Shown here one piece after another: positions 1 through 24,275 of a stretch of DNA of 64,000 nt. The number at the start of each line of letters is the position of its first letter. The stretch's first letter is position 1. The translations under genes and the position numbers were made by a program. The notes under the pieces were generated by a model, which had not been told where the DNA came from, made no database searches, and saw only the letters and a list, made by a program, of their open reading frames with translations. The stretch spans positions 124,001-188,000 of IMG/VR virus record IMGVR_UViG_3300022752_000015; one strand, given 5' to 3'.

Positions 1-987
1 ATTATCCCCTGTACGAGCAGTAGTGGGTAGAGAACTCTTACAATCTAGGTTTCGTAAACTTTGCCTAGGCAATATTCTTCGTTTATTTAACGGAGGTTGG
101 AATACCAAAGTTGATCCAAAGTTTTTTTGACCTGGCCAATTAAGCAACGGGCGGAGACCTATAGAATAACTAGCTACGTTTAAAGCTGTATCTGTGTCAG
201 AATAGGATGAATCATATTCTGCTCCACCATAAGTAGATAATTTTCTTACGGACTTAGAATAATCTAGTTCAGTAGCAAAATCTCTCATTTGATAATAACC
301 GTCAAGGAAGACTCCTACGGTCGCATTATCGTTTGATCCGCCAGTGTATAATCTCCAACCAGAACGAGGCGAGTATCTAAATTCAACGCGTCCGTTCTCA
401 TAAACTATACATTCAAAAATTAAAACGTTGTCTTCGGCTAAGGAAATTGAATGCCATCTAATGACAAGTCTTTTTCCTAAAGGAGAATTTTTGTCGATGC
501 AATACATCACTCCATTTGCTGTAGGGTGGTAGGCATCAGTGAGGGGGAAAAGCCCTTTGTTCACGGAGTCTTGTTGGACTGTCGTGAAGAGAGAAGCTAG
601 ATCGTATTTGTTTTTTAAATCATCAAACCATGGGGCAAGCAAGAGATGTTGCTTACCTCCAAAGCTTGAATTTATAGACCAATTTTCTCCAGAAGTTGAA
701 GATAAAATATCACCCAAAGAAAATGCGAACGAAGGATCAACAAGAAGCATCCATCCGTTTGTCGAAACGACGAATTTATTGTATGTGATGCCGTTGATCT
801 GAAATCCAAATCCGATGTCCAGCTCAGAAGAAACTGCATCATCAGCGCTTGGTTGTCCAACTGAACCTGGGATTGGCACGAATAACGATGCATCGACCCC
901 CGAAAGACCTCTACCTATTTCTTTGGTTAAAATATAATCTTTGAATAACCTCTGCGGAGGCGTTCTAGAAGATCTTGCGGAAGGCAT
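1..987 (-). CDS. Putative virion structural protein with N-terminal nidogen(NIDO)-like domain; partial, runs off the left edge (not in ORF track)
   Basis: Manual translation from ATG at 987 (overlapping the TAA of the upstream gene) is open to base 1: MPSARSSRTPPQRLFKDY...LDIGFGFQINGITYNKFVVSTNGWMLL...LLAPWFDDL...LVIRWH...FECIVYENGRVEFRY, which resembles the GF.F.FYG..Y...VSTNG...APFW.DL pattern of NIDO-like extracellular domains. Confidence 0.6.
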   Translation of the reverse strand, partial: MPSARSSRTPPQRLFKDYILTKEIGRGLSGVDASLFVPIPGSVGQPSADDAVSSELDIGFGFQINGITYNKFVVSTNGWMLLVDPSFAFSLGDILSSTSGENWSINSSFGGKQHLLLAPWFDDLKNKYDLASLFTTVQQDSVNKGLFPLTDAYHPTANGVMYCIDKNSPLGKRLVIRWHSISLAEDNVLIFECIVYENGRVEFRYSPRSGWRLYTGGSNDNATVGVFLDGYYQMRDFATELDYSKSVRKLSTYGGAEYDSSYSDTDTALNVASYSIGLRPLLNWPGQKNFGSTLVFQPPLNKRRILPRQSLRNLDCKSSLPTTARTGDN

Positions 988-1883
988 TAGTATCCAAACC
1001 CTCCAAATGCAATCGAATCAGTTCCATGAACCGTCACGTCATCGTACGTCCACCCTGCCGTTGCAGATATGTACCCGTCAGCAACGTAGTTATCGGTTGA
1101 CCCATTCAACAGTCTTGCGGCTAAAAGCATTGTACCTTCTAAGTTTGATGATAATTCTAACTTATACTTTTGATCGTTAAACGGAGCAATAAAAGTACGA
1201 TCGTCGTTAAAATATCCCATCGTTGGGATTTTCTTGACTTCTCCCACCATATCTATCATGTCCAACCAAGGAACAATCCTGTTCTCATTTCTTTCTCGAA
1301 CAGTCTTAATTCTATCATTAGATCGAATTATGGTGCTGTTGCCGTCCTCTAGATTGGCTTTCACGTCATGAGCTTCGAAAGGAACGTCAATGCTAAAAAA
1401 CGAAACTAGTGCTCTTATGGTTAAAGGCTCAATTACGCCGTTGAAGTTATAATTTTCAGTTTCATCATTATCGCCAGTAATAATAGGATATGAAAAAACT
1501 CGAGTTGACGTCAGGTAGTCAACAGGATCAAAATAATCAATATCGCTATAAAAATTATCTTTTCTAAAATTACGATCATATCCATAAGAATTTTTTCTGA
1601 CGACCCCTCCGGGTTCACCTGCGTGAATTTTTAAAGAAGTTCCCGCGTCAAAATGTCGAGACCTTGTGATCTCTACGCCTTGTCTAAAAGCGTCGATGGC
1701 AGATGTATCCATCGAACCAGTTAAAACGAATTCAGTTGACGAAGGCTTGAGTTTTAGATCGTTGCTTTCACCCTGACCATCATCAAAATATTCTTTGTTA
1801 ATTCTAGGTAAGAAACCATAGAAAAAATTAGTATTTTTTTTGGGTGTCAATAGCTGTAAAGCTTTGCTAACTTCATTTCCCAT
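987..1883 (-). CDS. Hypothetical virion/baseplate-associated protein
   Basis: 298-aa ORF, stop/start overlaps with both neighbours inside the baseplate operon; no recognisable motif. Confidence 0.55.
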   Translation of the reverse strand: MGNEVSKALQLLTPKKNTNFFYGFLPRINKEYFDDGQGESNDLKLKPSSTEFVLTGSMDTSAIDAFRQGVEITRSRHFDAGTSLKIHAGEPGGVVRKNSYGYDRNFRKDNFYSDIDYFDPVDYLTSTRVFSYPIITGDNDETENYNFNGVIEPLTIRALVSFFSIDVPFEAHDVKANLEDGNSTIIRSNDRIKTVRERNENRIVPWLDMIDMVGEVKKIPTMGYFNDDRTFIAPFNDQKYKLELSSNLEGTMLLAARLLNGSTDNYVADGYISATAGWTYDDVTVHGTDSIAFGGFGY

Positions 1884-4800
1884 TAAAATCTCCTTATCGT
1901 TCCAGCGATTTGTTGAAGCAACAAATTGTCTCTAATTCTATTACGATCATTTTCGCCTAGATATATCTCGCTAGAATAATACTCTTGCTTATGCCTTTCA
2001 AGCATGTGAGACTCTACGATAAAGTTAGTACCTTTATACACTGTCTTTCTAGGTATCAACTGTTCTATAAAATTGCTTATTGAATTATCAAACCAACTAT
2101 AGAACTCGAAAAAAGCCTTGAAATTTAGTTTTTCTTTCAAACGATTAAAGTACACGTTTCTCAAAGTTTCTAGATCTGGATAATCGGGGGAATAGACTAA
2201 ATCAGGATTTCCTATGGCGTTCTCTAGTGCTTCAAAAGTTGAGAACATGTTTACTATGTCGTTGTTTAAAGAATCAACCAAAGAAAAATCGATTGAAAAT
2301 CTAGTATCATCTGTTGGGCTTTCCGATCTAGATATCTGATGAACGGGCGCTCTCGAAGCCCAAGGGTTTGCATCAATCAAAGAATCTTCTAGATATCCAC
2401 GAACTCTTATCTTATCGTTAGATAGCGCTTCATCATAGTACGAAGACAAGTGTGAATACCTAATAATTTCAGGTAAGAAAAAGTCAGTGGCCGTTGGAAA
2501 TCCCGTTCCCAACATGTGCATGTTATTTTCGCTGAAATCCAAGAACGTGATGCTTCCGTCAGGAGCAGAAGCCGTTCTATTCGATTGTTTAGATAAAGAA
2601 TCTAGTCTTAGCTTTTCGAAAGAACCTGATACTGTGTACACGTAATTGTAGTTTTTGGATGGATCAGACACACCCAAAGACTGATAGTTTCGTATGTGTT
2701 CCGACCATTCTTTGGTGGTAAATGACTTTGACCAAAATCTTGTCTTAGCTAACCTTCCTTCAAAGTCAGTGCTTCTAGCTGCTTCGTCAGTAACAACTGA
2801 CGAGTTATTAAGGTAAAGATAAGTCGAAGTAGTTCCATCTGGAATTACTTGATTGGATCCTAAGCTCAAAAAAGTTCCAGATGCATTTAACGTTGAATTA
2901 AGACTTCTGAAAGCATTTTCATCAGGAGATCCCATTCCTGCTAGTTCAAAAAAGTAAGACGACGTCGTGTAATATGCTTGAATTTCTCCTTCATTTTGAA
3001 ATCCTGCTCGAATGTAGTAAGAAGATGAAGCTAAAGATTCTATCTCATCATTCCTTATGCATCCGAACGAAACGTTCCAAACATCTCCATTGAAAATAGA
3101 AGACTTATCTAGATTCAAACGTAATTTGAAAAGAGGAGCAGAAGTCGAATTACCAGGTCGCAAAAACAAATCAATTCTTGGATCGTTGTCGTCGTTGTAA
3201 GTAACCAAATTTGCAACCAATCCAGGATTTTGTATGCCAGAACCAGTCACACACAATCTAGCTAAAGATTGTGTCGTCGATAATATAACTCCAGAATTGA
3301 TTGATCCGTATTTGACAGCGGTCTCAAAAGTCCAAGAACCTGAAGTAAAGAGCCCATCATTCGGGTCATCAGAAATTCCATGAAATCCGTATGAAGGATC
3401 TTGAACATAATTTCCTGCAATTTTTGGTTTTCCTGCCTCTATTCTAGAGCCTGAAAGGTATTGAGACGTTACTAATGAAGAAGAGGTAAAGTTAATCATC
3501 GTAGTTACGTCAGACTTCAGCTCTCTAGATTTTGATAGAACTTTGTAAGTAGGTCCACCATACTCTCTAAATCTCATGCTGCTGTCTGGATCTATTCCTA
3601 CTGCTCTGAGAAATGATTTTATGCTATGTTGAGTCCCTTTTGAACGTATGACCGACGGTAAATTGACTAGAACTCTACGTAGTATTGAATTTTGAACTTG
3701 CTGTAAAGACAGAGATTCATTGCTCTTAAATAGAGGATCGATATTTTCTCCCTGCAAGTATTGTTCGACTGTAGAATTGGCAAACAGCGGAGGAATATAG
3801 AATCCATAGCTTTTCGCTATGTCAAAAAGAAAATTATCAGGAGCACTTTCTCTAGTATCATAAGAGACGTACTTGATTGTGCTAAATGTGTCAAGAAACA
3901 ACTTAATTTCATCAAAAAACTTTGCCCAAATATAAAGCAAAGACAGCAACAATTGAACGTTATTTAACTTACCTTGTCCAGGAATTCCTGTACCTGAATA
4001 CTGAGAACCGTTATTTTGTAACGCAGTATTGAACCCTTCTAACGCAGCACCTTCTAAAAGATAGTGTCTGGGAATTAACTTCGTTATCAAATTGGGATTT
4101 TCTGCATCAAAATCAGCAGCTTCGTTTAAAAGATCATTATTTAAAGCAACGACTCCTGCATAGGCTGGGAATAGAACCGGACAAGTCGACAGCTTTTCAT
4201 ATGTCATGTTGCTTGCTGTATCAGCAGCAGCGTCAATCCTTAAAGAATCTTCGAAATTTCTAACGTAGGAATGTAAAGAGTTTCCTGAGCTATCAAGAAC
4301 AATCGTGTTCGTTACGTCATTGTTGATTGGTGACAGCGGAGGGGCTGGTTCATTGAATCGATAATATAACTTTAAATCAGGAGTAGAAAAAATTGATTTT
4401 TTTGCATAAGAAGTTTGTTGGAGCACGCTTCTAACGCTATGAAAAACTCTTAACTCATCAAGAACCCCTGATAACGTCTGTTGCGGGGTGACTATAGTAG
4501 AAGCTACCTTGTAAGAAGTTCCGCTACCTATGACAAAATCATTATAGTCGATATCAAGATTGGTTAAATACATGCTATCAGAAGTAGCTTTTAAAATTTC
4601 ATTATTATAAAATCTTAAAACATTGTTGTTAGATTCTTTATCCAACACCACGCATAAATGATTAAATTCGCCTTTTTTAATCTGCGATGAAACCGTCATT
4701 GCAGCTGATCCTGAAAACACGTCAAACTGTGCCTCAACTTCATCTGTCGAAGTTGTAGGATTCAATCGCAAAGATATTCCGTGGTTGTTACTGGCATTTA

Positions 4801-5383
4801 TTTTTTGAAAGACTATTTGCGTTCCTGCAGTTTGTATGCTTGGAATGAAAAGCTGCATTTCTACGCTTAGTGACTTATCATTCTTTGGATTAAGAACTGA
4901 AGACTTTACTAACGCATCAGGGTTAAGTGATGGAAACATCGATCCCGGGATGTCTTTTACGACTATATAAGTTCCTTTGTCAGGAGTCGTTTCGGATAGC
5001 TGGGTTCCTGAAAAAAGCAACTCTCCTTTGTACTTCGGAATTTGATCAAAAACCCATTTTTCAAATCCAGTCAAGTTCGAAAAAAATGAATCTATTTCTT
5101 CTTTACTACCGTCAAAAGGATAAGAGTTAATTATCAACTCAAAAGCTAAGTTAACTTTAGCTTCCGCTGACATAAAGAAAGTATGATTTTCAAATTTTGA
5201 CCAGTCTATGTCGAGCTGCTGAGTAGATTTTAATCCTGTTCCCTGAATGTCGTTTGCAAATGAGTTTTCGTTGCTGGAGTCAGACTCAGGTAAATCTGCA
5301 AACTTCAATACGTAAGATCTGTTGTTATCTCCAACTGCCTTTATAAAAGAAGGTACGTACTGAGTGAAACTGTAATTAGCCAT
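1883..5383 (-). CDS. Large baseplate wedge-like protein with LamG/concanavalin-A-like domains
   Basis: 1166 aa; LamG-type motifs (FNHLCVV...LRFYNN...FVIGSG...LSGVLDELRVF; second domain SWTFE...WNVSF...FEGRLAKTRFW) and a baseplate-wedge-like NLPSVIRSKGTQHSIKSFLRAVG segment; lies in an operon with the gp6/gp25-like genes. Confidence 0.6.
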   Translation of the reverse strand: MANYSFTQYVPSFIKAVGDNNRSYVLKFADLPESDSSNENSFANDIQGTGLKSTQQLDIDWSKFENHTFFMSAEAKVNLAFELIINSYPFDGSKEEIDSFFSNLTGFEKWVFDQIPKYKGELLFSGTQLSETTPDKGTYIVVKDIPGSMFPSLNPDALVKSSVLNPKNDKSLSVEMQLFIPSIQTAGTQIVFQKINASNNHGISLRLNPTTSTDEVEAQFDVFSGSAAMTVSSQIKKGEFNHLCVVLDKESNNNVLRFYNNEILKATSDSMYLTNLDIDYNDFVIGSGTSYKVASTIVTPQQTLSGVLDELRVFHSVRSVLQQTSYAKKSIFSTPDLKLYYRFNEPAPPLSPINNDVTNTIVLDSSGNSLHSYVRNFEDSLRIDAAADTASNMTYEKLSTCPVLFPAYAGVVALNNDLLNEAADFDAENPNLITKLIPRHYLLEGAALEGFNTALQNNGSQYSGTGIPGQGKLNNVQLLLSLLYIWAKFFDEIKLFLDTFSTIKYVSYDTRESAPDNFLFDIAKSYGFYIPPLFANSTVEQYLQGENIDPLFKSNESLSLQQVQNSILRRVLVNLPSVIRSKGTQHSIKSFLRAVGIDPDSSMRFREYGGPTYKVLSKSRELKSDVTTMINFTSSSLVTSQYLSGSRIEAGKPKIAGNYVQDPSYGFHGISDDPNDGLFTSGSWTFETAVKYGSINSGVILSTTQSLARLCVTGSGIQNPGLVANLVTYNDDNDPRIDLFLRPGNSTSAPLFKLRLNLDKSSIFNGDVWNVSFGCIRNDEIESLASSSYYIRAGFQNEGEIQAYYTTSSYFFELAGMGSPDENAFRSLNSTLNASGTFLSLGSNQVIPDGTTSTYLYLNNSSVVTDEAARSTDFEGRLAKTRFWSKSFTTKEWSEHIRNYQSLGVSDPSKNYNYVYTVSGSFEKLRLDSLSKQSNRTASAPDGSITFLDFSENNMHMLGTGFPTATDFFLPEIIRYSHLSSYYDEALSNDKIRVRGYLEDSLIDANPWASRAPVHQISRSESPTDDTRFSIDFSLVDSLNNDIVNMFSTFEALENAIGNPDLVYSPDYPDLETLRNVYFNRLKEKLNFKAFFEFYSWFDNSISNFIEQLIPRKTVYKGTNFIVESHMLERHKQEYYSSEIYLGENDRNRIRDNLLLQQIAGTIRRF

Positions 5384-5397
5384 TTGTTTGCCTTACA

Positions 5398-6942
5398 TCA
5401 CGAAACTTGAGAGTTGCTAACGTTAAATACATTTGAGACAGCCTTATAGATTTTTTTGTACCCTATCACGTTAACCATTATATCAACTACATAACTTCTA
5501 TCTAGCGGTAAACTAGACATATCCAAGTTAAAGTACATGCCGTCTGTGTCACTAGACACTCTTGTTGAGTTATAAACTTCGTCAAACGGAATTATTACTT
5601 CGTTTGTCGAAAAATCTCTTACTTGATAATAAGTTCTTTTTAACACTATCCCAGGCAAGTTAATTGGTTTTTTAACTAACTTGATAAAAGGTGCAGTATA
5701 ATCGAATATATTAAGACGAACTATCACGTCTTCATTCGACCTATGCAAGTTTTGTAATCCAGTCGTCGTAATCACATATTCTTTTCCATCAAGTATAGCA
5801 GAACTTCTGTTAGGCGGATAAGCATATAAGTCAGATCCTGTGTAATAAACTACAGATTCATCTAACGAACTCCAGACAGGAGTGAAAAGAACAGAACCTG
5901 ATTTAGCTAGTTCAGCGTATAAAATTGAGTCCGATTGCGGAAGCACGAATGATGCAGAATATAATCCTGCAAAATAATTCAAGCCGTCGAAATGTTGAGA
6001 TCCTGTCGCGTATATTGAATAAGATCCGCTACCGTCAGACCTCGTTGTCTTTAACTTTAACAATAAACAATTGCTACCAGTAACTTGTGATAAGGAAGAT
6101 CCACTCAAGATGTTAGAAAGTTGATCATCTCGATAATTTCTTAAAAACATTGTTGATGTTGTGTCGAATCTTAATATCCTCGAATCATCAATAATCGAGT
6201 CATTATATCTTACAATCATTCGTGGGTGTTTTGAAGAATTGTAAGCCGTTCTAGCAGCGAACCTTTTAACAAAGTAAGAATAAGCGTTGTTTTCTTCAAC
6301 GTTAGAGAAAGAAATTCTAAATCCGTTATCAGGCAAATCACCTGAAAGAGTAGCTGACACGATGGTTGTAACATCTAAATCTAGATTTTCTTCTCCAGAA
6401 GCAAAATGTTGTTTAGACTCAAAGCTAGAAATAGATAACAAATTTGACGATGTTATATAATCGCAGCTTGATTCAGCATAACCCGCTAACGAACATCCTG
6501 TAACAAACCATGATCCTTCAGAGAAAGATGAAGATAAGAAATTGCAATAATCAATATCAGAGTAATAAACTACGTCCCTTCCTTCTCCTTCATCAAAAGA
6601 TCTGGACAAAGGATAAGCTGATACGTCGAAATTATTTGGAGTTGTTTGCCCTCCGTACACATCAAATAGTTGCAATTTGCAATTGAAAGACGAATGATTA
6701 ATGTTTATCTTATTTTGCGATATTAGGTCTTTTAAAGGTTGCAGATCAAAATGAATGAGAATTCTTGAGAGTTCTTTTCTTGGATTGCCATTCTCATCAA
6801 GATTAGATCCGTACAATTTAAAAAGATCTAAAGTAGAAGCCGCGCCAACATTTGAACTAGTTTTTATGGACGAAGTACTTGCGTTTCTAACAAATCTGTT
6901 AGTAATATAAGCGTCTTTATCCGCTAACAATACTTTATACAT
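5398..6942 (-). CDS. Virion structural protein with N-terminal DNRLRE/CBM96-like domain
   Basis: 514 aa; ADKDAYIT...NVGAASTL...SRILIHFDL...CKLQLFD...AYPLSRSFDEGEG resembles the DNRLRE-domain pattern; coupled to the gp6-like gene. Confidence 0.5.
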   Translation of the reverse strand: MYKVLLADKDAYITNRFVRNASTSSIKTSSNVGAASTLDLFKLYGSNLDENGNPRKELSRILIHFDLQPLKDLISQNKININHSSFNCKLQLFDVYGGQTTPNNFDVSAYPLSRSFDEGEGRDVVYYSDIDYCNFLSSSFSEGSWFVTGCSLAGYAESSCDYITSSNLLSISSFESKQHFASGEENLDLDVTTIVSATLSGDLPDNGFRISFSNVEENNAYSYFVKRFAARTAYNSSKHPRMIVRYNDSIIDDSRILRFDTTSTMFLRNYRDDQLSNILSGSSLSQVTGSNCLLLKLKTTRSDGSGSYSIYATGSQHFDGLNYFAGLYSASFVLPQSDSILYAELAKSGSVLFTPVWSSLDESVVYYTGSDLYAYPPNRSSAILDGKEYVITTTGLQNLHRSNEDVIVRLNIFDYTAPFIKLVKKPINLPGIVLKRTYYQVRDFSTNEVIIPFDEVYNSTRVSSDTDGMYFNLDMSSLPLDRSYVVDIMVNVIGYKKIYKAVSNVFNVSNSQVS

Positions 6943-8777
6943 TATATGCTAGTCCTTCCAATTATGTCTACGTTGGGAAATTTGAATTCGAATATTCCAC
7001 CCTCTGGTGGATATAACATACCTTTTCTAAGATGCATTTTTACGTCAAAAGAATTTTCGCTGTATTGAAGATTGTTTATCTTTCCGTTTAAATTAAAGAA
7101 TTCTATATTAGTAACAGCGATAACACCAGGGGTGTTATATATCAAATTTTGCAAATCGTTGATGACAATTGGTTGATCTATAGAAAAATTCTTAATATTG
7201 AGACGATCGATCAACTTTACCAAGATTTCTTGCAGTAAAATTTGTTTATTCAAGGAAGGATCGGCAACGACCTCGAAAATCATCGATAGATTGACTATGT
7301 AAGCGTCTAATATATCGATTGCATCATTCACCAGACGATAAGGGGCAATATATTTTCGAAGATTTTCTTTCAACGTATCAGGACTATTTATTAAAGTAGA
7401 ATTTGCAGATCTTGAAACAACGTAAAGTTGAGTCGCTAGAGGGTTGTTGGGATTTGAACGAACTGCAGCTCTAAATACTCGACCAAAGTTAGAAGGTATA
7501 GAATAGATCCTAGCAAGCAAATCTTCTCTTGTCACAATTCTTTCTTGAGCATTTCTTGCTGAAGGAATTAAGGATTTCAACTCGTCGACGCCTGGTGCTT
7601 CTTCTCCTCCTGAAGCCACCTTCTTGTTCGTGACGACCATGCCATTTCTAACTGCGTTTATAACTGAAAGCTTTGGATTTAGCGGAAAATCCACTGTCAT
7701 ACTAGTGATAGTGTTGATAGTCTTTGCAGGAACGTTGTGAGATAGTCCACCGCCATATCTATAAACCACTGTTAATTGAGACTCTGGCGCATACACTCCC
7801 AAAGTCCTCGTCTTCAACATTTGAAGAGGGTTAACTGTTGTTCTAGAGAACGTTTTTGAATAAGGAAAGCTAATTGCAAACTCAGATGGATCAGGAACCG
7901 CATCGTCTTCAAGACTGGTGTCTGAACCTCCACCCATGATCATATAGGTTTTTCTGGTGCTTAGATCAACATTGGTGATGTACCGATACGGAGCTGGAAT
8001 TACTTTTATAGCTTCAGATATTTCTTGAGAATCTCTAGCTAAATTCAATACGTTACGATAGACAACATCATCTGTCAACGAACTAACTTCGTAATAAACG
8101 TTACCTTTGCTATCAAACACCGATAATATTTCCGTGACATTGCTTCTTGATAATTCAATCGTCCTAAATGGTAATTCTCCGCTTAACGAAAAAGATTCTT
8201 TTTCTTGTTTACCAGAAATGCATTGTCCATCTAAAACCATGACAAAGCTAAGAGGAGTACCATCCCCAGATATCTTTCCAACTTGAACATCAGCTAAAAA
8301 AGTACCATCTGATCTTTTTCTGGAAAAATCTACGTCTGAAAGCAACGTAAAGTCTATTCCTGAGTTAGAAGTAAAGATAGAATTTGCCCTTACGATCGGT
8401 AGAGCTTCAGCAGAAGGAACTATGGCGTTAGAAACTATCGATGATGGAACTTCGATAACAAAAGTTAAATCAACTATTGAAGGAGAAGCTCCCGTTATTT
8501 TAACTCCCGAAGACCTGATAGCTCGTTCTATGTTTTGCGGTTCAATCGCAGCGTTGTAATCTAATTCGTTGTATTGATGATCCAAATAAAAAGACATCAC
8601 ATCGCCTGTATAGGCGGCTAAGTCTAATAACATTCCTCCCATAGAAGATTCAGAAAAATCTTGTATCTTATCAGGGTAATAAGTCCTTGCGTATTGAACA
8701 AGCTGAGCTCGAAGAGAATCAAAATCTTTTGCTAGATAAGTCCTAATACGATAGTTCTTTAAATCATTTATTGCCAT
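6942..8777 (-). CDS. Baseplate wedge subunit (T4 gp6 / baseplate J-like)
   Basis: 611 aa; YLAKDFDSLRAQL...DFSESSMGGMLLDLAAYTGDVMSFYLD, GGEEAP...AQERIVTREDL are typical gp6/gpJ motifs. Confidence 0.85.
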   Translation of the reverse strand: MAINDLKNYRIRTYLAKDFDSLRAQLVQYARTYYPDKIQDFSESSMGGMLLDLAAYTGDVMSFYLDHQYNELDYNAAIEPQNIERAIRSSGVKITGASPSIVDLTFVIEVPSSIVSNAIVPSAEALPIVRANSIFTSNSGIDFTLLSDVDFSRKRSDGTFLADVQVGKISGDGTPLSFVMVLDGQCISGKQEKESFSLSGELPFRTIELSRSNVTEILSVFDSKGNVYYEVSSLTDDVVYRNVLNLARDSQEISEAIKVIPAPYRYITNVDLSTRKTYMIMGGGSDTSLEDDAVPDPSEFAISFPYSKTFSRTTVNPLQMLKTRTLGVYAPESQLTVVYRYGGGLSHNVPAKTINTITSMTVDFPLNPKLSVINAVRNGMVVTNKKVASGGEEAPGVDELKSLIPSARNAQERIVTREDLLARIYSIPSNFGRVFRAAVRSNPNNPLATQLYVVSRSANSTLINSPDTLKENLRKYIAPYRLVNDAIDILDAYIVNLSMIFEVVADPSLNKQILLQEILVKLIDRLNIKNFSIDQPIVINDLQNLIYNTPGVIAVTNIEFFNLNGKINNLQYSENSFDVKMHLRKGMLYPPEGGIFEFKFPNVDIIGRTSI

Positions 8778-8795
8778 AATAGTTCCACCATTACA

Positions 8796-9260
8796 TTATA
8801 TTGCATACAAGACTATCTGCAATGATCTAATTTCAGTGCTAATCTTAGGGACAGTATAAGTTATCGTAATCTTAACAATAGCTGTAGAAAAATTGTTGAC
8901 ATTATCGGCAGAAGAAGAAAAATCTTTCAAAGAAACGAAAGGCATCCATTTTTCAACAGCGCTTCTTATTCTTGTGATAGCTAGTTCATCGAATGCATCG
9001 AGATTTGATATCTCTGATGTCAATTCTCTTAAATTTGCGCCAAAATAATACGAACCTAAACGCTCACCCCAGTTAGTCAAAAGCAAATTCTTCAAATTAT
9101 CATGTATCTGATCAGCTAAGCTATAATGCATAGCATATATGTCTTTATCGCTGACCTGCAAGGGGGTCTTTATACCTATGGGTTGCAAAAAAGTCTGCTC
9201 AACAGCCGTAGCGGGTTGTGAAGCAAGCTTTCCAGAACTCTTGAAATTAAAGCTACCCAT
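8796..9260 (-). CDS. Baseplate wedge / sheath initiator protein (T4 gp25-like)
   Basis: QIHDNLKNLLLTNWGERLGSYYFGANL...IRSAVEKWMPFV matches the GPW/gp25 family; adjacent to the gp6-like gene. Confidence 0.85.
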   Translation of the reverse strand: MGSFNFKSSGKLASQPATAVEQTFLQPIGIKTPLQVSDKDIYAMHYSLADQIHDNLKNLLLTNWGERLGSYYFGANLRELTSEISNLDAFDELAITRIRSAVEKWMPFVSLKDFSSSADNVNNFSTAIVKITITYTVPKISTEIRSLQIVLYAI

Positions 9261-14597: not shown

Positions 14598-14883
14598 TGT
14601 TCGGTTGTAATTTTTCGTTTACTATGTTGTTAGCTACTAAAAGCATGGCATCGCGGGCGTTCTTTGCGCTTTGTACTAATTCGACAGCAATTGGATCATC
14701 AAATGCAACTGGTGTTTCTAACAACTTTGTCATTCTTCCATAAGAAAAATCAAGCACGTCTAAAGATTCTTCAATTCTTTCAGTCAAATCTTCAAACTGT
14801 TCTAACGTCTGCATGTGCCTCTTTACTAAGAGAAACAAACATGAAAATGTTAAAAGATTAGAAAATATCAAAAAATAAATCAT
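14590..14883 (-). CDS. Small membrane-anchored coiled-coil protein
   Basis: 97 aa; hydrophobic N-terminus MIYFLIFSNLLTFSCLFLLV followed by a heptad-like helix; overlaps both neighbours. Confidence 0.55.
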   Translation of the reverse strand: MIYFLIFSNLLTFSCLFLLVKRHMQTLEQFEDLTERIEESLDVLDFSYGRMTKLLETPVAFDDPIAVELVQSAKNARDAMLLVANNIVNEKLQPNNE

Positions 14884-16040
14884 TTTAAGAAATGTCCTAA
14901 TTGATCATCATAAATTTTCGCAACTTCTGAAAACCGATATTTCTCTTTAATCACATTAGCTCCTTCTAATGCCCATTCTTTAGGCAAAGTAGGAGATGAT
15001 CTAAACTTTGCAATTTTTTTCTTAAAATCTGACTCTAGGGGTTCAGCCCATTTAGCTCCTGCTACAAAGATCTTATCATCTATGCGCGACGGATGGACTG
15101 GGACGATCTTACTATCAATCTTAGTAAATTTGGTGTGCTTCAAAAAATCTAAGTGTCCTGACCAATTTGTAGCAATGACTGGTAATCCAGAAGCGGCGGC
15201 TTCTAAAATTGGTAATCCATATCCTTCTCCCCTAGTCAAAGTTACCAAAGCTTTAATTTTAGGATTCGTGTAAAGACCAGCTACATCTTTATTACTTAGT
15301 TCGCCATGCAAAAGATGTAATTTAGGATATGGACCTTTTCTAACTTCAGATAAAACATTTTTTAGAATCTTAATGATAAGATTTCTATCAATTTTAGTAT
15401 TTCTTCCTGAATTAGTCTTTAGAACTATTCCAACATCAGGATCATCCTTAAAAACTTCGCACAACCATTTAATGGTAAACAGAATATTCTTTCGATCATT
15501 GTGCGGGTTATTTCCTGTAAGTTGTCCGAACACTAAAAAATTAAATTTGGTGTCAACTTCTGGCAAATCTAAACTGTGATCATTACCTAATATTTCTTCG
15601 CAAAAAGATTCTGGTATTACGTGAACTGGTTTTATTACTTCGCCTATTGAAGTAATGCTTTCTTTTGCATGATTAGAAGGAAAAACAACTGCATCCATGC
15701 TGTTACAAGCGGTTACCCAAGACGTATGAGCCTTGTCTGTTTCTACTGATGCTGTCAAACCTACGTTTTTTGAAGATAATTTTGGATCCCATTCGTTAGG
15801 AAGCTGAAGTTGAAAAGAAACGTCTGCCTTGTAATCAGGACCAACCGTTCTTTCCATTATTTTTCCGACCAATCCATCATCAAAATCTTTATCTAAAATC
15901 CATGGAGTATCTCCCCAAGGAGTTGCCATAAATTTCACGGAAATATCAGGTTGATTAATTAACCACTTTGCTACCTGTCTACTATGAACTCCGTATCCAG
16001 ATTGCGTCATCACAGGACCCCTGAGAACTACAGTTTTCAT
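14880..16040 (-). CDS. Glycosyltransferase, GT4 family (GT-B)
   Basis: RGPVMTQSGYG...DRKN...GEGYGLPILEAAASGLPVIATNWSGHLDF (EX7E motif); start moved to ATG 16040 (ATGA overlap with upstream stop). Confidence 0.85.
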   Translation of the reverse strand: MKTVVLRGPVMTQSGYGVHSRQVAKWLINQPDISVKFMATPWGDTPWILDKDFDDGLVGKIMERTVGPDYKADVSFQLQLPNEWDPKLSSKNVGLTASVETDKAHTSWVTACNSMDAVVFPSNHAKESITSIGEVIKPVHVIPESFCEEILGNDHSLDLPEVDTKFNFLVFGQLTGNNPHNDRKNILFTIKWLCEVFKDDPDVGIVLKTNSGRNTKIDRNLIIKILKNVLSEVRKGPYPKLHLLHGELSNKDVAGLYTNPKIKALVTLTRGEGYGLPILEAAASGLPVIATNWSGHLDFLKHTKFTKIDSKIVPVHPSRIDDKIFVAGAKWAEPLESDFKKKIAKFRSSPTLPKEWALEGANVIKEKYRFSEVAKIYDDQLGHFLK

Positions 16041-17281
16041 AGAGAATTTACCTCCCAAGCTTTTCTTTGGTCTTTCCAAGTTTCAATCAGTTTCATCAAT
16101 GAAATATCCCAATCAGAAACAATCTTCTTTAGATCATAATCTTTGTGAGCGTGTTCTAATGCTCTCATTCCGACTTGCTTTCTCTTATCAGGACCCCATT
16201 CATACATTTCTAAAAATGCATTTGCTAATTTTTCATGAGTAACTAAATCTTCGTAAATGAAAGGTACCATTTGATTGCCAACCAAAGATTTAACGTCAGG
16301 TTCTAATGCAATCCCATATTGTTCACCAGTCTCTAGATCTTCAACTTGTCTAGTTAACCCGCCGGTTTTAATAGCAATAATGGGCTTTCCACACATCATA
16401 GCTTCTAAAGTGGGTAAACCAAATCCTTCATTAGAACTTCTATTAACGATTGTATCGCATGCCGAATAAACTTCTCTCATTTCATCGAAATCAACTCTCT
16501 TTTTAGAGAATTTTACATGATCTTCAATCTGAAGCATCTCTATGACATGATAAAGATTAGGACCTTCATGATCAAGAGGATCTGTATGCATCAAAAGCGT
16601 AGCTTTTTTATGACCATGCTTTTCTTGCAAAGCATCTAAAAATTGCTTCCAAGACACTAAAATATCACTTGGCATTTTTCTTCTAGCATTTCTAGAGACA
16701 TAAAGAGCCACAAAGTGATCTGCTCTATCGGAACCTAAAATCTTAACTTTATTTTTTCTAGAATTATCTTCAGATAAAGGATAATAGATTTCTTTTGGAA
16801 CTCCATGAGGAATATAGTTGGTTTTTTCTGGAAATCTTTCCTTAACCATTTGATAGGTGGGCCAATTTATACAATTGACTAAATCAGTAGATTCATATAG
16901 CACTTTATTGAATTCTGGCCAAGGACCGTTATCCCATAGATGATTGTATGCGATTGGACATATTTGATGTATTTCATCCTCCATTTCCCAAACCCAAATA
17001 AAAAATCTAGGATCGGTAAATAGCATTAGAGCGTCTGGTCGTTCAGTCGCAAGGACTTGTCGCAAAAGATTTCTGTCACCAAATCCGTTAGTCGGTTTGA
17101 TAATGAAATCTTCATTTACTACAATCGTTCTATAGTCTTCATGCTTCATTGCACCACCAAAGCACTTAAACTTATATTTCCCTGTAGAAATTAGTCCATT
17201 AATCAACCATCTAGCTTGAGTTCCTACTCCGCTCGTAGAAAGTGGGTGATCTGAAAGTAACAATATTGTCTTTTTCTGCAT
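16037..17281 (-). CDS. Glycosyltransferase, GT4 family (GT-B)
   Basis: LSDHPLSTSGVG...VSRNARRK...NEGFGLPTLEAMMCGKPIIA (EX7E motif). Confidence 0.85.
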   Translation of the reverse strand: MQKKTILLLSDHPLSTSGVGTQARWLINGLISTGKYKFKCFGGAMKHEDYRTIVVNEDFIIKPTNGFGDRNLLRQVLATERPDALMLFTDPRFFIWVWEMEDEIHQICPIAYNHLWDNGPWPEFNKVLYESTDLVNCINWPTYQMVKERFPEKTNYIPHGVPKEIYYPLSEDNSRKNKVKILGSDRADHFVALYVSRNARRKMPSDILVSWKQFLDALQEKHGHKKATLLMHTDPLDHEGPNLYHVIEMLQIEDHVKFSKKRVDFDEMREVYSACDTIVNRSSNEGFGLPTLEAMMCGKPIIAIKTGGLTRQVEDLETGEQYGIALEPDVKSLVGNQMVPFIYEDLVTHEKLANAFLEMYEWGPDKRKQVGMRALEHAHKDYDLKKIVSDWDISLMKLIETWKDQRKAWEVNSL

Positions 17282-17341
17282 CAACGATATATTACCTACT
17301 TTTCAAAAGTTGTAATAAAAATTCATCAAACTAACAAAAAA

Positions 17342-18160: not shown

Positions 18161-18196
18161 TGTTATAAGGTAATTTACATTACCTTATTAGTTCAA
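18161..18196 (-). promoter_or_regulatory. Sigma70-like promoter, leaderless type, overlapped by a perfect 10-bp inverted repeat
   Basis: TTGAAC-N18-TACCTT-N6-ATG(18160); IR ataaggtaat-ttac-attaccttat at 18165-18188. Confidence 0.55.
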
Positions 18197-19125
18197 TCTT
18201 TGGGTTTTTTAGAAACTGCACGGCCAGACATGCGTTCCCAATCTCTGTCTTTTCTAACCTCAAGATTCTTTTCCCACGCAGCTTTAAGAACAGTCGGTTT
18301 AACCTCAAGATTTTTTGCAACGTCGATCATAGCATTGATGTCCTTAGGGAAACAGTGACCCCCGCTGCCAAAGTCACCATCAGGTCCAGGTACACTCCAG
18401 TGGCTTGATCCTAACCTAGAATCATACTTTGCATATTCAATTACCTTATCATAATCCACATTTAATCCGGATTTATCTAGGGCATTACAAACCTGATACA
18501 TCTCGTTTGCAAACGAAACCTTAACTGTCAGGAAGTTATTAGTGACATATTTCACCATCTCAGCTGTCGTTGACGAAGTTTTGATGAGTGGAACTTTTGG
18601 AAACGCTGTTTGAAAAACTTGTTTCACGGTATTAATCCACGGGCGAGGTCCACCAAGAATAATACGATTTTGATTTCTCATGTCATCTAGAGCGTTGGCC
18701 TCTGTGAGAAATTCTGGATTAAAAACTACATGAAGGCCTTGTTCCGAGAACATCTTGTTCCATCTCTCAGTAGAGCCAGGAGGAACCGTGGATTTTACTA
18801 CAGCAATTCTCTCGCCAGGTAAAGTTGCCAATTGCGAAAGAACACCTTCTACGATAGACAGATCCGCAGATCCGTCATCATACATCGGAGTCGGTAGACA
18901 CACAAAATACACTTTTGAGAAGTTTTCAGATGCTTCACATGACTTTACGAACTCATTTACATTAGTCGGGTGTAATCCTTCTGGTGTTGTTGGTTGCTTT
19001 CCTCCAGTACAGACTTTTCCTGTCTTGTCATGCACCAAGACGTCGAATCCTCTTTCAGCAAAGACAGTAGTAAGAGAGCCGCCAACAAACCCTTGACCTA
19101 CAACAGCAATAGATTGTTTCTTCAT
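18193..19125 (-). CDS. ugd: UDP-glucose/GDP-mannose 6-dehydrogenase family protein (short form)
   Basis: GQGFVG Rossmann motif, CLPTP, KSTVPPG, FNPEFL, AEMVKY, GGHCFPKD (catalytic Cys); only 310 aa. Confidence 0.9.
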   Translation of the reverse strand: MKKQSIAVVGQGFVGGSLTTVFAERGFDVLVHDKTGKVCTGGKQPTTPEGLHPTNVNEFVKSCEASENFSKVYFVCLPTPMYDDGSADLSIVEGVLSQLATLPGERIAVVKSTVPPGSTERWNKMFSEQGLHVVFNPEFLTEANALDDMRNQNRIILGGPRPWINTVKQVFQTAFPKVPLIKTSSTTAEMVKYVTNNFLTVKVSFANEMYQVCNALDKSGLNVDYDKVIEYAKYDSRLGSSHWSVPGPDGDFGSGGHCFPKDINAMIDVAKNLEVKPTVLKAAWEKNLEVRKDRDWERMSGRAVSKKPKD

Positions 19126-19160
19126 ACAAAGATTATAAGAAAAAATAAAAAAATGATCAA
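19126..19160 (-). promoter_or_regulatory. Sigma70-like promoter, leaderless type
   Basis: TTGATC-N17-TATAAT-N6-ATG(19125). Confidence 0.65.
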
Positions 19161-19162
19161 GA

Positions 19163-20068
19163 TTATTCTAACGCCTTAATAACAGTTTTCCATCCAACAT
19201 CATTCTTTATTACGTTCACTGATTCAATTATTTTGTCTTGAAGTTGATTCGCTTCTTTCAAGTTTCTTCTTATCACTTCAATTGCATTCTCAAATGAATC
19301 ATAAGTCATTATCGTAGAGATATTATTTTTAGGAACATAATTTTCTAATTCTTCTTCATAATCTCTAATGCTTATACAACCTCTAGCTGCGGCCTCAACA
19401 TCTTTAATCCACAGTGCATTTGCTGAGATGTTTTTTCCATTCACTTGCCAATTGACTTGCTCATTATGCACATAGATTTTTATATTTGACAAATTTTGCA
19501 AAAATTCTTGGTAAGGAGCAGGTTTCAGCACCTCGACAACAATTCCTTCACTTTTAAGATAATCAAAGAATTTTTTCCTATAAGGATGTAGTTGGCCACA
19601 AAAGCCTAAATCTATTTGTCGTGAAGATAATTCAGGAACAGCAGAACAATATTCTGGCAACATCCACATCTTCACAAATTTAGACCTTATTCCTTGAGAG
19701 TTGATAAAGTCGCTCCACCACTTCGACGTATTTAAGAAGGATAAAACATTCAACTCGTTATAAATCTTATGATATGAACCCTTGTATTGCGAATCATCTT
19801 TGAAAGATTCCCAAGGATCCTGTTCATAGATATAAATTTCTCTATTATCTAAAAACCTCTTAATTGTATGAACGTTGTTGTTTATTGTCCTAAGCTTTAA
19901 ACATGACAATATCCTATCATGGTTTGAAGATATTTTTTTATTCTTCAATATGTCATCAATTGTGCTAAAGGTCAATTCACACTCTTGACTTAAGGTTTTG
20001 AATAACTGATGTTGATAACAGTTAGACTGAATGTAAGACAAGTTGTCAATCAATACATGCAATTTCAT
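19163..20068 (-). CDS. Putative GT-B glycosyltransferase-like protein
   Basis: DLGFCGQLHPYRKKF...YQEFL...IYVHNE...KDVEAAARGC resembles CgeB/Glyco_trans_1_2-type C-termini; glyco-cluster context. Confidence 0.55.
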   Translation of the reverse strand: MKLHVLIDNLSYIQSNCYQHQLFKTLSQECELTFSTIDDILKNKKISSNHDRILSCLKLRTINNNVHTIKRFLDNREIYIYEQDPWESFKDDSQYKGSYHKIYNELNVLSFLNTSKWWSDFINSQGIRSKFVKMWMLPEYCSAVPELSSRQIDLGFCGQLHPYRKKFFDYLKSEGIVVEVLKPAPYQEFLQNLSNIKIYVHNEQVNWQVNGKNISANALWIKDVEAAARGCISIRDYEEELENYVPKNNISTIMTYDSFENAIEVIRRNLKEANQLQDKIIESVNVIKNDVGWKTVIKALE

Positions 20069-20769
20069 CTTTTTACTTTTTCTTTTGAGTAAGTTCTCTT
20101 AGCAATTTCAAAAGCATTTTGAAAATCTTCATCTCTATAATCAACATTTTCGTACGATAAAGACAACTTAAATCCCATTAGACACATGCCTCTGATTCTG
20201 TCAAAATCGTTTTTTTCCCAAGCAGAATAGACCTTATTAAGAATGTCTGATTGGTTCTTTTTACCTCTATGAAAGCCGTAATGAAATGCTTGAGATTCTG
20301 AAGAGTACCAGCAATGCTTCCCGGCAGGTATTAACTTTTCAGGTAATTGATTTCCGCGTAAAACGATATCATGACCCGTGTCTGCTCGATCAGGATACAA
20401 CTTATCAACTTTTGTTGCAACATTGACAGTGTTTTTTAAGCAAGTTAGTCCATATATCAAGCTGTCTGTCAAATAATCGTGTAACCAAGCTTGCGCACCT
20501 GTTACTCTAGAGTTACTTTCAAAAACTTCAACAAAGTTTTTTATAACTTCATTATGAGACAAGACAGTATCGGCATCAACCTTCAAGAAAAGTTGATGAT
20601 CTTTTTTAGCTTCATTCCACGCGGAAAATAATTTTTCATGAGCTTCTTTTTCTGGAAGATTAGAAACAACGTAATGTGTCAGTTCTACGCCTACTTGATT
20701 TTTTATTGATTCTTTACAAGTTTGAAAATCTAACTCTCCATGTTCCATGGTTCCAACAAAAATTTTCAT
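20065..20769 (-). CDS. Putative GT-A (GT2-like) glycosyltransferase
   Basis: FLKVDADTVL DxD motif after a hydrophobic strand; cluster context. Confidence 0.55.
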   Translation of the reverse strand: MKIFVGTMEHGELDFQTCKESIKNQVGVELTHYVVSNLPEKEAHEKLFSAWNEAKKDHQLFLKVDADTVLSHNEVIKNFVEVFESNSRVTGAQAWLHDYLTDSLIYGLTCLKNTVNVATKVDKLYPDRADTGHDIVLRGNQLPEKLIPAGKHCWYSSESQAFHYGFHRGKKNQSDILNKVYSAWEKNDFDRIRGMCLMGFKLSLSYENVDYRDEDFQNAFEIAKRTYSKEKVKR

Positions 20770-22076
20770 TTATCATTCCAATCTTGTCTTAACAAATACA
20801 TACAAATAGAATCATGATATTTTTCTTCTCTATACAACGATTCAACTTGTTTACCTTCTTTTTTGAACCCTAGATTCTTATAGACTTTTTGTCCCACCAC
20901 GTTGTATGATGCTGTTGTCAGCGAAACTCTATGTAAATTTAACGCGTTGAAACATACCTGAAGCATCAGCTTCCACATGAATTTTGCGTATCCTTTTCCT
21001 CTATGATTTTTGTGTATGTCCGCTCCTAACACACAATTGTTATTATTACGATCTATCGAATAGATCTTACAAAAGCCTACTTTTTCTTCATTAACGCAAA
21101 AAATATATCTTTTTTCTTTTTCTTTATGTAAAGAATTCCACCACCTCAAATGAGATTCTAAAGTAATAGGTTGTGGATTTGTCAAATTTTTTAGGACTTC
21201 AGGATCATTGTGCAGATCTACTAACCAATCATGATCATCGTCACAAACTTCTCTTAAAGAAAACAAGTCTTCTTTCTCACAAAAATGAGAATCTACAACT
21301 GAATAGAATTGACTAGAGATTTCAGAATTTTTAAACTTATGACTCATTGAACCTCTTTGATGTCCTACAAAGGGTAAATTATCTAATTGATACTCTTCAT
21401 GATAATCGTTGTTAGTTTTTATTATTTTTGCGTTTTTTGTAGGCTTTTCGTGAGTCAATATTTTATAAGAAATACTGTTTTCGTGTAGGAAACTAGGTAT
21501 TTGCCAGCCTGTATCTCTTAAAACTCGAAAGCCTATAGGTAATTGATATATTTCTGCTTCTAAATCGTTAGATATATCTAAATGAGATCCTTTATGAGGG
21601 GTAACGTCTATGCCAGAAAAATCTACGTTTTTTGACATAGCAAACCAAGTAAAGTTTGGTTTATTTTTATAAGTTTGAACGTTTCCAGAACCAGATGAAA
21701 ATCCGCCATAAGCTTCATATGATGAACCTAAAATATCAACTTTTGATAATTCATCTACAAGTAATTTATCCCATTCTTTAACTAACATGACTGTATCTGA
21801 ATCAGCAATCACATTAATTGAATTATTTTTTGATTTTATTTTAGAAAGAGCTAATTTAATTGCCTCACAATGTCCTCTAGTCCCTCTTTCGTTGTTAACA
21901 AAATGAGAAACTATTGATTTTGAGCTATGAAATTTGTTAAAAGAATATTCATCTAAACAGTAAGCATGAAATTTTAACTTGTTCTTATTACTAAGAAGTT
22001 GACTATAGTTTTTTTGCATATATTCAAAATAAGCAATTGAATTTTCGCTGACTGTAACATGAATATTAATTTTCAT
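20766..22076 (-). CDS. Fusion: GT-A-like N-terminal domain + GNAT (PseH/RimL-like) N-acetyltransferase
   Basis: N-part VIADSDTVML (DxD); C-part LREV...HNDPEV...HLRWW...VGFC...HRGKGYAK...LNLHRVSL...YKNLGFKKEG, a typical GNAT acetyl-CoA motif. Confidence 0.7.
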   Translation of the reverse strand: MKINIHVTVSENSIAYFEYMQKNYSQLLSNKNKLKFHAYCLDEYSFNKFHSSKSIVSHFVNNERGTRGHCEAIKLALSKIKSKNNSINVIADSDTVMLVKEWDKLLVDELSKVDILGSSYEAYGGFSSGSGNVQTYKNKPNFTWFAMSKNVDFSGIDVTPHKGSHLDISNDLEAEIYQLPIGFRVLRDTGWQIPSFLHENSISYKILTHEKPTKNAKIIKTNNDYHEEYQLDNLPFVGHQRGSMSHKFKNSEISSQFYSVVDSHFCEKEDLFSLREVCDDDHDWLVDLHNDPEVLKNLTNPQPITLESHLRWWNSLHKEKEKRYIFCVNEEKVGFCKIYSIDRNNNNCVLGADIHKNHRGKGYAKFMWKLMLQVCFNALNLHRVSLTTASYNVVGQKVYKNLGFKKEGKQVESLYREEKYHDSICMYLLRQDWNDK

Positions 22077-23211: not shown

Positions 23212-23212
23212 T

Positions 23213-24238: not shown

Positions 24239-24275
24239 CGTTCAAATTATAACTTTTGCAAAAAAAACTGTTCAA
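24239..24275 (-). promoter_or_regulatory. Sigma70-like promoter, leaderless type
   Basis: TTGAAC-N18-TATAAT-N7-ATG(24238). Confidence 0.65.

What the first reader, a model, noticed from the sequence alone, without database searches (positions are those of the whole stretch)
1883..8777. Structural proteins are studded with [S/T]-[G/A/S]-S tripeptides: a possible O-glycosylation sequon
Seen in the 1166-aa protein: FSGSA, LSGSR, TSGSW, VTGSG, VSGSF, FTSSS, ASSSY. In the 514-aa protein: LSGSS, VTGSN, GSGSY, ATGSQ, YSASF, KSGSV, YTGSD, LSSSF. By eye they are much rarer in the long enzymes (helicase, Mre11-Rad50, GTs). Inference: a short small-residue motif, often after a hydrophobic residue, recurring across otherwise unrelated virion proteins could be the acceptor site for the adjacent GT island.
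Basis: inference. Interest (0 to 1): 0.75.

Follow-up and report, generated by a model that had tools for sequence, protein, structure and literature searches.

The report
Conserved Ser/Thr-small-Ser motif on phage virion
The outer virion proteins of this uncultured jumbo phage and its relatives carry a conserved six-residue motif (hydrophobic-x-Ser/Thr-Gly/Ala/Ser-Ser-hydrophobic) far more often than chance allows; it could be a sugar-attachment site for the phage's own glycosyltransferases, but it could equally be a structural feature of beta-sheet domains.

Summary
The two motif-bearing proteins (1166 aa and 514 aa) have 22 [ST][GAS]S against about 10 expected, even when residues are shuffled only within 20-40-residue blocks.

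Genome-wide, 28 outer virion ORFs have 152 against 64 expected (z 11). The other 213 ORFs have 121 against 125. The real unit is phi-x-[ST]-[GAS]-S-phi: 43 against 6.5 in the outer set, 12 against 13 elsewhere. Same-composition permutations are not enriched.

Across hundreds of environmental homologues, 27 sites keep the motif, changing only within its classes. Ser is kept across TCN/AGY codon switches.

The gp6-like protein inside the reported coordinates has no motif, and neither does its family.

Three lineages with a conserved adjacent GT4 pair (this clade, Flavobacterium phage immuto, Microcystis phage Mel-JY01) show the extended motif at about 6.6-7x. Three myoviruses with no GT4 hit (T4, A511, cyanophage S-RIM14) do not. 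All positives belong to one broad lineage.

No tool here could show glycosylation or surface exposure. Gly-type sites sit at hairpin turns in AlphaFold models.

My estimates: structural beta-turn and strand-edge feature 0.42; O-glycosylation sequon 0.30.

The parts
1883..5383 (-). 1166-aa baseplate or outer-wedge protein: Laminin_G_3 domain at residues 169-319, a central helical region, and a second beta domain at about 620-980. It has 11 motifs. Eight are family-conserved: residues 224, 634, 644, 681, 713, 786, 807 and 919, at window 4706-4714, 3476-3484, 3446-3454, 3335-3343, 3239-3247, 3020-3028, 2957-2965 and 2621-2629.
5398..6942 (-). 514-aa protein: an N-terminal jelly-roll (CBM-like) domain plus two Ig-like sandwiches. 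It has 11 motifs. Eight are family-conserved: residues 137, 164, 280, 288, 313, 329, 348 and 368, at window 6526-6534, 6445-6453, 6097-6105, 6073-6081, 5998-6006, 5950-5958, 5893-5901 and 5833-5841. Seven motifs fall in the first Ig-like domain (262-380) and none in the second.
6942..8777 (-). 611-aa gp6-like inner baseplate wedge protein. It has no motif (0 vs 1.9), and its family averages 0.44x. It serves as an internal negative control.
8796..9260 (-). 154-aa gp25-like baseplate wedge protein, at chance level for the motif.
987..1883 (-). 298-aa protein downstream of the 1166-aa gene. Its family is 2.9x enriched, with one conserved site at residue 55.
14880..17284 (-). Two adjacent GT4 (GT-B) glycosyltransferases of 399 and 415 aa. 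Both keep the EX7E motif. They are core genes of the clade (59-70% identity) and have orthologous adjacent pairs in immuto and Mel-JY01.
18193..32906 (-). Sugar island: UDP-glucose dehydrogenase; PseH-like GNAT fusion, PseC-like aminotransferase and PseB-like 4,6-dehydratase (20766-24238); then GT2 and GT4 genes up to a 640-aa GT2-domain protein. No ORF has a membrane-spanning segment.
51674..55400 (+). 402-aa and 831-aa LamG-like virion proteins that share a C-terminal domain. Motif counts are 9 vs 2.3 (z 4.6) and 15 vs 3.8 (z 5.9).

Best explanation
SHOWN: phi-x-[ST]-[GAS]-S-phi is a real motif under purifying selection. It is confined to the peripheral baseplate proteins, the fibres, and the accessory (non-core) parts of the sheath and major capsid proteins in a lineage of aquatic large myoviruses.

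INFERRED, most likely mechanism: it is a structural feature of these outward-facing beta domains and is not necessarily modified. In the Gly form, the S/T is the last residue of a beta strand, Gly takes the first loop position, and Ser caps the turn, giving tight hairpins. In the Ala/Ser form, the triplet lies within or at the edge of a strand, so the two hydroxyls point to one face and the small residue to the other. This would allow close sheet or fibre packing and a neutral, hydroxyl-rich surface. Fibre proteins use it as a periodic unit, such as F-[ST]-G-S-F and [ST]-A-S-[YF] repeats.
For: - Flanks are hydrophobic: 0.71 at position -2 and 0.61 at +1, against a background of 0.34.
- In the AlphaFold models, Gly-type sites sit at strand-to-loop junctions. 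Site 224 of the 1166-aa protein is a two-residue hairpin; site 368 of the 514-aa protein is a three-residue hairpin; sites 681 and 786 lie just before strands and 713 just after one.
- Many sites are Gly-only and sit among invariant neighbours; SGS at 681 is kept in 117 of 117 homologues.
- Periodic use of the motif in fibre repeats.
- [ST]GS is mildly raised in two unrelated control phages as well: A511 8 vs 3.4 and S-RIM14 23 vs 13.8.
- The motif is absent from the alpha/beta inner baseplate proteins and from enzymes.
Against: - Turn positions normally let N, D, G, S and T interchange. Here N, D, A and G are almost excluded at positions 1 and 3, and control class triplets give 0-6 conserved sites against 27.
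- The same triplet is conserved in several backbone contexts: hairpin, mid-strand, coil and helix end.
- Two Ig-like domains of one protein carry 7 and 0 motifs.
- Between the 514-aa family and its remote homologue immuto gp111, only about 1 of 7 positions coincides, yet motif density is kept.
- T4, A511 and S-RIM14 outer proteins are also beta-rich and lack the extended motif.
Confidence: 0.42

Rival explanations
1. O-glycosylation sequon. Soluble phage GT4 enzymes, the conserved adjacent pair, would prime Ser/Thr in phi-x-[ST]-[GAS]-S-phi on virion proteins in the cytoplasm. Other island glycosyltransferases would extend the glycan using island-made sugars, such as a PseB/C/H-type di-N-acetyl-trideoxyhexose and UDP-GlcA.
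For: - Hydroxyl-specific conservation, with Ser kept across TCN/AGY codon switches at 17 of 27 sites.
- The motif occurs only in outer or accessory virion parts: 7 of 7 sites in the capsid protein lie N-terminal to the 347-608 stretch that matched the major-head-protein family, and 20 of 22 in the sheath paralogues lie in the N-terminal two-thirds.
- It recurs in proteins with no detectable similarity and in lineages whose beta domains no longer align.
- The extended motif is 6.6-7x where the GT4 pair exists, and 0.55x, 0.83x and a non-significant 3 vs 1.3 where no GT4 exists.
- LR756508 has only one of the two GT4s and shows a weaker signal.
- The island has no membrane proteins.
- Precedents: GT4-family enzymes glycosylate Ser-rich repeats (PMC5230774); the SASSAS signature motif of Lentilactobacillus S-layer glycoproteins (PMC10221546); mycobacteriophage virion glycosylation (cited in PMC12582341).
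Against: - There is no direct evidence for any modification.
- The acceptor of the glycosyltransferases is unknown; they could act on DNA (TS-like gene plus epimerases) or on host glycans.
- The motif is embedded between hydrophobic residues in ordered beta structure.
- Individual sites are far more conserved than glycosites usually are.
- The co-occurrence rests on one broad lineage against three outgroups.
Confidence: 0.3
2. Ligand-binding surface. Arrays of paired hydroxyls on the exposed sheets of lectin-like (LamG, CBM-like, Ig-like) domains would bind host polysaccharide weakly, as proposed for Ig-like decorations on phages.
For: - The motif-rich proteins carry LamG-, CBM- and Ig-like folds.
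- There is roughly one motif per strand in the first Ig-like domain of the 514-aa protein.
- The proteins are located peripherally in the virion.
Against: - Hosts differ widely (Flavobacterium, Microcystis, unknown freshwater hosts), yet the motif is the same.
- It is also found in the sheath and in the capsid accessory region.
- Binding sites usually include aromatic and charged residues.
Confidence: 0.1
3. Artefact of composition, low complexity, internal repeats or paralogy.
For: - The outer proteins are Ser-rich (10-15%).
- Several fibre proteins are internally repetitive, and some are paralogous.
Against: - Block shuffles keep the ratios at 2.2x for the tripeptide and 6.3x for the extended motif.
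- The permutations G[ST]S (0.96x) and [ST]SG (1.1x) are not enriched.
- Removing repeat proteins and paralogues leaves 99 vs 41.
- The Ser-rich 1326-aa protein has 5 vs 5.8.
Confidence: 0.02

Closest known systems
Virion glycosylation in mycobacteriophages (Freeman et al. 2023; cited in PMC12582341; the paper itself could not be read)
   Same: Phage-encoded glycosyltransferases near structural genes. Virion proteins are the proposed acceptors of O-linked sugars added in the cytoplasm.
   Different: From my own knowledge, those are siphoviruses of actinobacteria, glycosylated on Ser/Thr-rich C-terminal extensions of the capsid and tail-tube subunits, with no defined internal sequon. Here nothing is shown experimentally, and the motif sits inside folded beta domains.
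Serine-rich-repeat and SD-repeat adhesin glycosylation by GT4-family enzymes (GtfA/GtfB, SdgA/SdgB; PMC5230774)
   Same: Soluble GT-B enzymes add sugars to Ser in S-x-S-type sequences before export. Some fibre segments here ([ST]AS[YF] repeats) resemble such repeats.
   Different: Those targets are long, repetitive Ser-rich tracts (from my own knowledge, intrinsically disordered). GtfB is a non-catalytic partner (my own knowledge), whereas both phage GT4s keep EX7E. The only family hit to GtfA is marginal (E 7e-4).
SASSAS signature motif of Lentilactobacillus S-layer glycoproteins (PMC10221546); that it is the O-glycosylation site is from my own knowledge
   Same: A short Ser-Ala-Ser-type acceptor motif that matches [ST][GAS]S.
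   Different: A single site per protein in a secreted S-layer protein. There is no Gly form and no hydrophobic frame.
Autonomous glycosylation in giant viruses (chloroviruses, mimivirus; PMC4691112, PMC7019647)
   Same: Virus-encoded nucleotide-sugar pathways plus soluble glycosyltransferases that decorate capsid or fibril proteins without the host's membrane machinery. The specific 4,6-dehydratase, aminotransferase and N-acetyltransferase steps are from my own knowledge.
   Different: Eukaryotic viruses. The PBCV-1 glycans are N-linked at atypical sequons.
Two-residue beta-hairpin turns with Gly at the first loop position and Ser/Thr/Asn at the second (general structural knowledge)
   Same: The Gly-type sites match this geometry in the models.
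   Different: Such turns normally also accept Asn or Asp. The Ala/Ser-type sites cannot adopt this geometry.

Membership tests
Protein O-glycosylation sequon | Motif over-represented in target proteins beyond composition | tested here: met
   Outer set 152 vs 64; extended motif 43 vs 6.5; block shuffles and permutations as controls.
Protein O-glycosylation sequon | Acceptor hydroxyl conserved | tested here: met
   Position 1 is S or T in 96% of cells and position 3 is S in 92%. Motif Ser is 84-97% conserved against 34-46% for other Ser. Codon-class switches are seen.
Protein O-glycosylation sequon | Sites solvent-exposed | not testable with these tools
   The models return only DSSP and pLDDT, with no coordinates.
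Protein O-glycosylation sequon | Cognate protein glycosyltransferase present | tested here: inconclusive
   A soluble GT4 pair and more glycosyltransferases are present and conserved. Their acceptor is unknown, and their PDB and NCBIfam neighbours are generic.
Protein O-glycosylation sequon | Motif enrichment co-occurs with the glycosyltransferase across genomes | tested here: inconclusive
   Three positive lineages against three GT4-less controls, plus one intermediate. All positives share ancestry.
Protein O-glycosylation sequon | Sugar detected on the motif residue | not testable with these tools
   Needs virion glycoproteomics.
GtfA/GtfB serine-rich-repeat system | Catalytic GT4 paired with a non-catalytic GT-B partner, and a long disordered Ser-rich substrate | tested here: not met
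   Both GT4s keep EX7E. The substrates are folded beta domains.
Pseudaminic acid pathway | PseB, PseC and PseH plus PseI (NeuB) and a CMP-transferase | tested here: not met
   PseB-, PseC- and PseH-like hits fall below the curated cut-offs. No NeuB or CTP_transf_3 was found in the 212.8-kb record, though the record is only about 59% complete.
Gly-Ser two-residue hairpin turn | Motif at a strand-loop-strand junction with Gly first in the loop | tested here: inconclusive
   This holds for most Gly-type sites. It does not hold for sites 313, 329 and 807 (in strands) or for sites 644 and 919 (coil); the family-conserved SAS at residue 421 lies in a helix.

The most novel reading that the evidence does not exclude
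phi-x-[ST]-[GAS]-S-phi is the acceptor sequon of a phage-encoded cytoplasmic O-glycosylation system. The system would consist of a conserved GT4 pair plus a variable sugar island. It would coat the outer virion surface (capsid accessory region, sheath accessory domains, baseplate periphery, fibres) of a widespread lineage of aquatic large myoviruses. To my knowledge this would be the first sequence-defined sequon for phage virion glycosylation.
Probability: 0.3. Interest if true: 0.85.

Novelty: new variant of a known kind. Interest (0 to 1): 0.6.

Why it matters
Outside actinobacteriophages, phage virion glycosylation is almost unexplored, and no acceptor rule is known. If this motif is a sequon, glycosites could be predicted from sequence across thousands of environmental phage genomes. 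It would also give a function to the glycosyltransferase islands common in aquatic large phages, with consequences for host recognition, particle stability and grazing or immune recognition.

If it is purely structural, it is still a sharply lineage-specific and strongly selected sequence rule for exposed beta domains. It marks outer versus inner virion proteins in genomes where most genes have no annotation.

Two cultivated relatives, immuto and Mel-JY01, make the question directly testable.

Tried and rejected
- **Composition artefact:** rejected by whole-protein and 20/40-residue block shuffles and by same-composition permutations.
- **Repeats or paralogy as the only source:** rejected. Removing five repeat or paralogous proteins leaves 99 vs 41, and an all-against-all BLAST shows few paralogues.
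- **DNA-level motif:** rejected. Ser is encoded by both TCN and AGY at the same sites.
- **Generic property of myovirus outer proteins:** rejected for T4, A511 and S-RIM14.
- **GtfA/GtfB-like active/inactive pair:** rejected.
- **Full pseudaminic acid pathway:** not found.
- **Close relatives in the GenBank phage collection:** none. Only remote ones turned up.
- **Relative solvent accessibility:** could not be computed, because no model coordinates are delivered.
- **Freeman et al. 2023:** could not be read.
- **Fold search of the 514-aa model:** gave only generic Ig- and CBM-like matches.
- **Fold search of the 1166-aa model:** not run, because the model's confidence is low (pTM 0.44).
Full report
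**Setting.** The window is bases 124,001-188,000 of a 212,804-bp linear uncultured virus record that CheckV rates about 59% complete. The finding covers three minus-strand genes.
- A 1166-aa protein with a Laminin_G_3 domain.
- A 514-aa protein with no family match.
- A 611-aa gp6-like baseplate wedge protein, followed by a gp25-like gene.

From 14,880 to 32,906 lies a sugar island. It holds two GT4 genes, a PD-(D/E)XK nuclease, UDP-glucose dehydrogenase, PseH-, PseC- and PseB-like genes, and several GT2 and GT4 genes. No island ORF has a membrane-spanning segment.

**The observation.** Counts against per-protein shuffles:

| Protein | Observed | Expected | z |
|---|---|---|---|
| 514 aa | 11 | 3.6 | 3.9 |
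| 1166 aa | 11 | 5.8 | 2.2 |
| gp6-like, 611 aa | 0 | 1.9 | - |
| 402 aa (elsewhere in window) | 9 | 2.3 | 4.6 |
| 831 aa (elsewhere in window) | 15 | 3.8 | 5.9 |

The 402-aa and 831-aa proteins are LamG-like. The helicase, Mre11-Rad50 and the glycosyltransferases are at expectation.

I defined an outer-virion set of 28 ORFs over the whole genome. It comprises the contiguous module from the sheath genes to the 514-aa gene, plus the 402-aa, 831-aa, major capsid and 668-aa proteins. The set was partly chosen after seeing the data.
- Outer set: 152 vs 64 (2.4x, z 11.4).
- The other 213 ORFs: 121 vs 125.
- Outer set after dropping repeat proteins and paralogues: 99 vs 41.
- Shuffling only within 20- or 40-residue blocks leaves the ratios unchanged.

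Split by exact tripeptide, SGS (65 vs 34) and TGS (46 vs 23) carry most of the signal. GSS, SSG, GSG and SGG are at expectation.

Hydrophobic residues flank the motif. The extended form phi-x-[ST]-[GAS]-S-phi occurs 43 times vs 6.5 in the outer set and 12 vs 13 elsewhere.

**Conservation.** The 514-aa and 1166-aa proteins each have more than 860 environmental homologues.

Motif ratios were computed for families extracted from 81 IMG/VR loci:

| Family | Observed / expected |
|---|---|
| 514 aa | 3.3x |
| 1166 aa | 3.15x |
| 298 aa | 2.9x |
| 474 aa | 2.6x |
| 952 aa | 1.9x |
| gp6-like | 0.44x |
| 836 aa | 0.5x |
| 521 aa | 0.8x |
| sigma factor, glycosyltransferases, nuclease | about 1x or lower |

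- Twenty-seven alignment sites keep the motif in at least 60% of homologues in the five rich families. The gp6-like and 521-aa families have none. Control class triplets give 0-6 such sites.
- At several sites only the class is conserved. Residue 137 of the 514-aa protein reads SSS, TGS, SAS, SGS, TSS or TAS in 117 of 118 sequences.
- Pooled residue use is S 52% / T 44% at position 1, G 56% / S 24% / A 18% at position 2, and S 92% at position 3. Because sites were picked for keeping the motif, this spectrum is partly circular.
- Motif serines are 84-97% conserved, against 34-46% for other serines.
- At 17 of the 27 sites, the position-3 Ser uses both TCN and AGY codons across homologues.
- In the major capsid protein, all 7 motifs lie N-terminal to the 347-608 stretch that matched the major-head-protein family.
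- In the three sheath paralogues, 20 of 22 lie in the N-terminal two-thirds. Three capsid sites are kept in 110-118 of 118 homologues.

**Structure.**
- The 514-aa model (pLDDT 86) is a jelly-roll domain plus two Ig-like sandwiches. The first sandwich holds seven motifs and the second none.
- The 1166-aa model is weaker (pLDDT 68).
- Gly-type sites mostly sit where a strand ends and a tight loop begins. Ala/Ser-type sites lie in strands or coil.
- No coordinates are delivered, so exposure could not be measured.

**Comparison across phages.** Ratios are for the outer proteins of each phage.

| Phage | GT4 status | [ST][GAS]S | Extended motif |
|---|---|---|---|
| T4 | no PF00534/PF00535 hit | 0.98x | 0.55x |
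| Listeria A511 | no PF00534/PF00535 hit | 1.24x | 3 vs 1.3 |
| Cyanophage S-RIM14 | no PF00534 hit | 1.21x | 0.83x |
| Flavobacterium phage immuto | adjacent GT4 pair | 2.8x | 7.0x |
| Microcystis phage Mel-JY01 | adjacent GT4 pair | 3.4x | 6.6x |
| LR756508 (484 kb) | 415-aa-type GT4 only | four ORFs at z 2.6-3.0 | - |

- The 415-aa GT4 has orthologues only in the same remote relatives that share the gp6-like protein, plus RM378.
- In immuto and Mel-JY01 the gp6-like and gp25-like proteins are motif-free. Mel-JY01 was tested as a prediction.
- All five large relatives in the window's own clade carry 4-5 GT4 matches.
- Immuto gp109 aligns with the 1166-aa family only in the helical core.
- Immuto gp111 is a remote homologue of the 514-aa family. 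It shares about one motif position with that family yet has 7 vs 1.3.

**Interpretation.** The motif is real, selected and specific to outer virion parts. Two readings remain.

The structural reading is favoured by the hydrophobic frame, the hairpin geometry, the Gly-only sites, the periodic fibre repeats and the mild [ST]GS excess in A511 and S-RIM14.

The sequon reading is favoured by five points:
- hydroxyl specificity;
- the variety of backbone contexts;
- the 7-versus-0 split between two Ig-like domains;
- turnover of positions while density is maintained;
- co-occurrence with the GT4 pair.

The link to the glycosyltransferases is only circumstantial. All positive lineages are related. 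The genome also has a divergent thymidylate-synthase-family gene beside two sugar epimerases, which leaves DNA glycosylation open as an alternative role.

I put the structural reading at 0.42, the sequon at 0.30, a glycan-binding surface at 0.10, an artefact at 0.02, and the remainder on something not considered here.

Noticed in passing
outside the window: genome 44,079-49,361 (L093:79-5361): A divergent thymidylate-synthase-family ORF (332 aa; 82 bits against ThyA cut-offs above 300) sits between a thymidine kinase and two GalE/TviC-like nucleotide-sugar epimerase paralogues. It may be a pyrimidine hydroxymethylase and therefore a DNA hypermodification route.
   Followed up: partly
outside the window: genome 112,302-113,261 (L085:302-1261): A collagen-like protein with long G-X-Y repeats (GPTGS/GPTGP type) followed by a globular C-terminal part. 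The repeats resemble GPT repeats that are glycosylated in some bacterial collagen-like proteins (my own knowledge).
   Followed up: no
outside the window: genome 97,885-107,321 (L084:885-10321): Three tail-sheath paralogues of about 1,020 aa each, in tandem (29-52% identical). Their N-terminal two-thirds lie outside the sheath-family match.
   Followed up: partly
window 17342-18160: A PD-(D/E)XK nuclease lies between the GT4 pair and the rest of the sugar island. At about 77% identity it is among the most conserved genes in related loci.
   Followed up: no
window 45037-49017: A 1326-aa Ser-rich (11.6%) protein of unknown function shows no motif enrichment (5 vs 5.8). It is a useful internal control, and it has no PHROG or Pfam match.
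   Followed up: partly
window 58754-61891; 33645-34874; 36651-37301; 40054-41472: A fused Mre11-Rad50 (SbcD+SbcC) protein of 1045 aa, a GroEL-like 409-aa protein, a ClpP protease and a PIN-PhoH fusion.
   Followed up: no
L089:33659-36820 (immuto gp101) and genome 116,083-118,020 (L085:4083-6020): The fibre or spike proteins of two distant phages share YSHAEG-type repeats and GDGSGLTGI / DGTSYLVAG-type units. Immuto gp101 has 60 motifs in 1053 aa, including tandem [ST]AS[YF] repeats of about seven residues.
   Followed up: partly
L003 (IMGVR_UViG_3300044641_009805, 278,435 bp): This contig encodes a 99%-identical 514-aa protein but is 65 kb longer than the window's record. Together with the CheckV estimate of 59%, it suggests the window's genome is a fragment.
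   Followed up: no
window 14880-16079 and 16037-17284: Both GT4 ORFs were called from TTG starts and overlap by 43 bases. The true start codons are uncertain.
   Followed up: no
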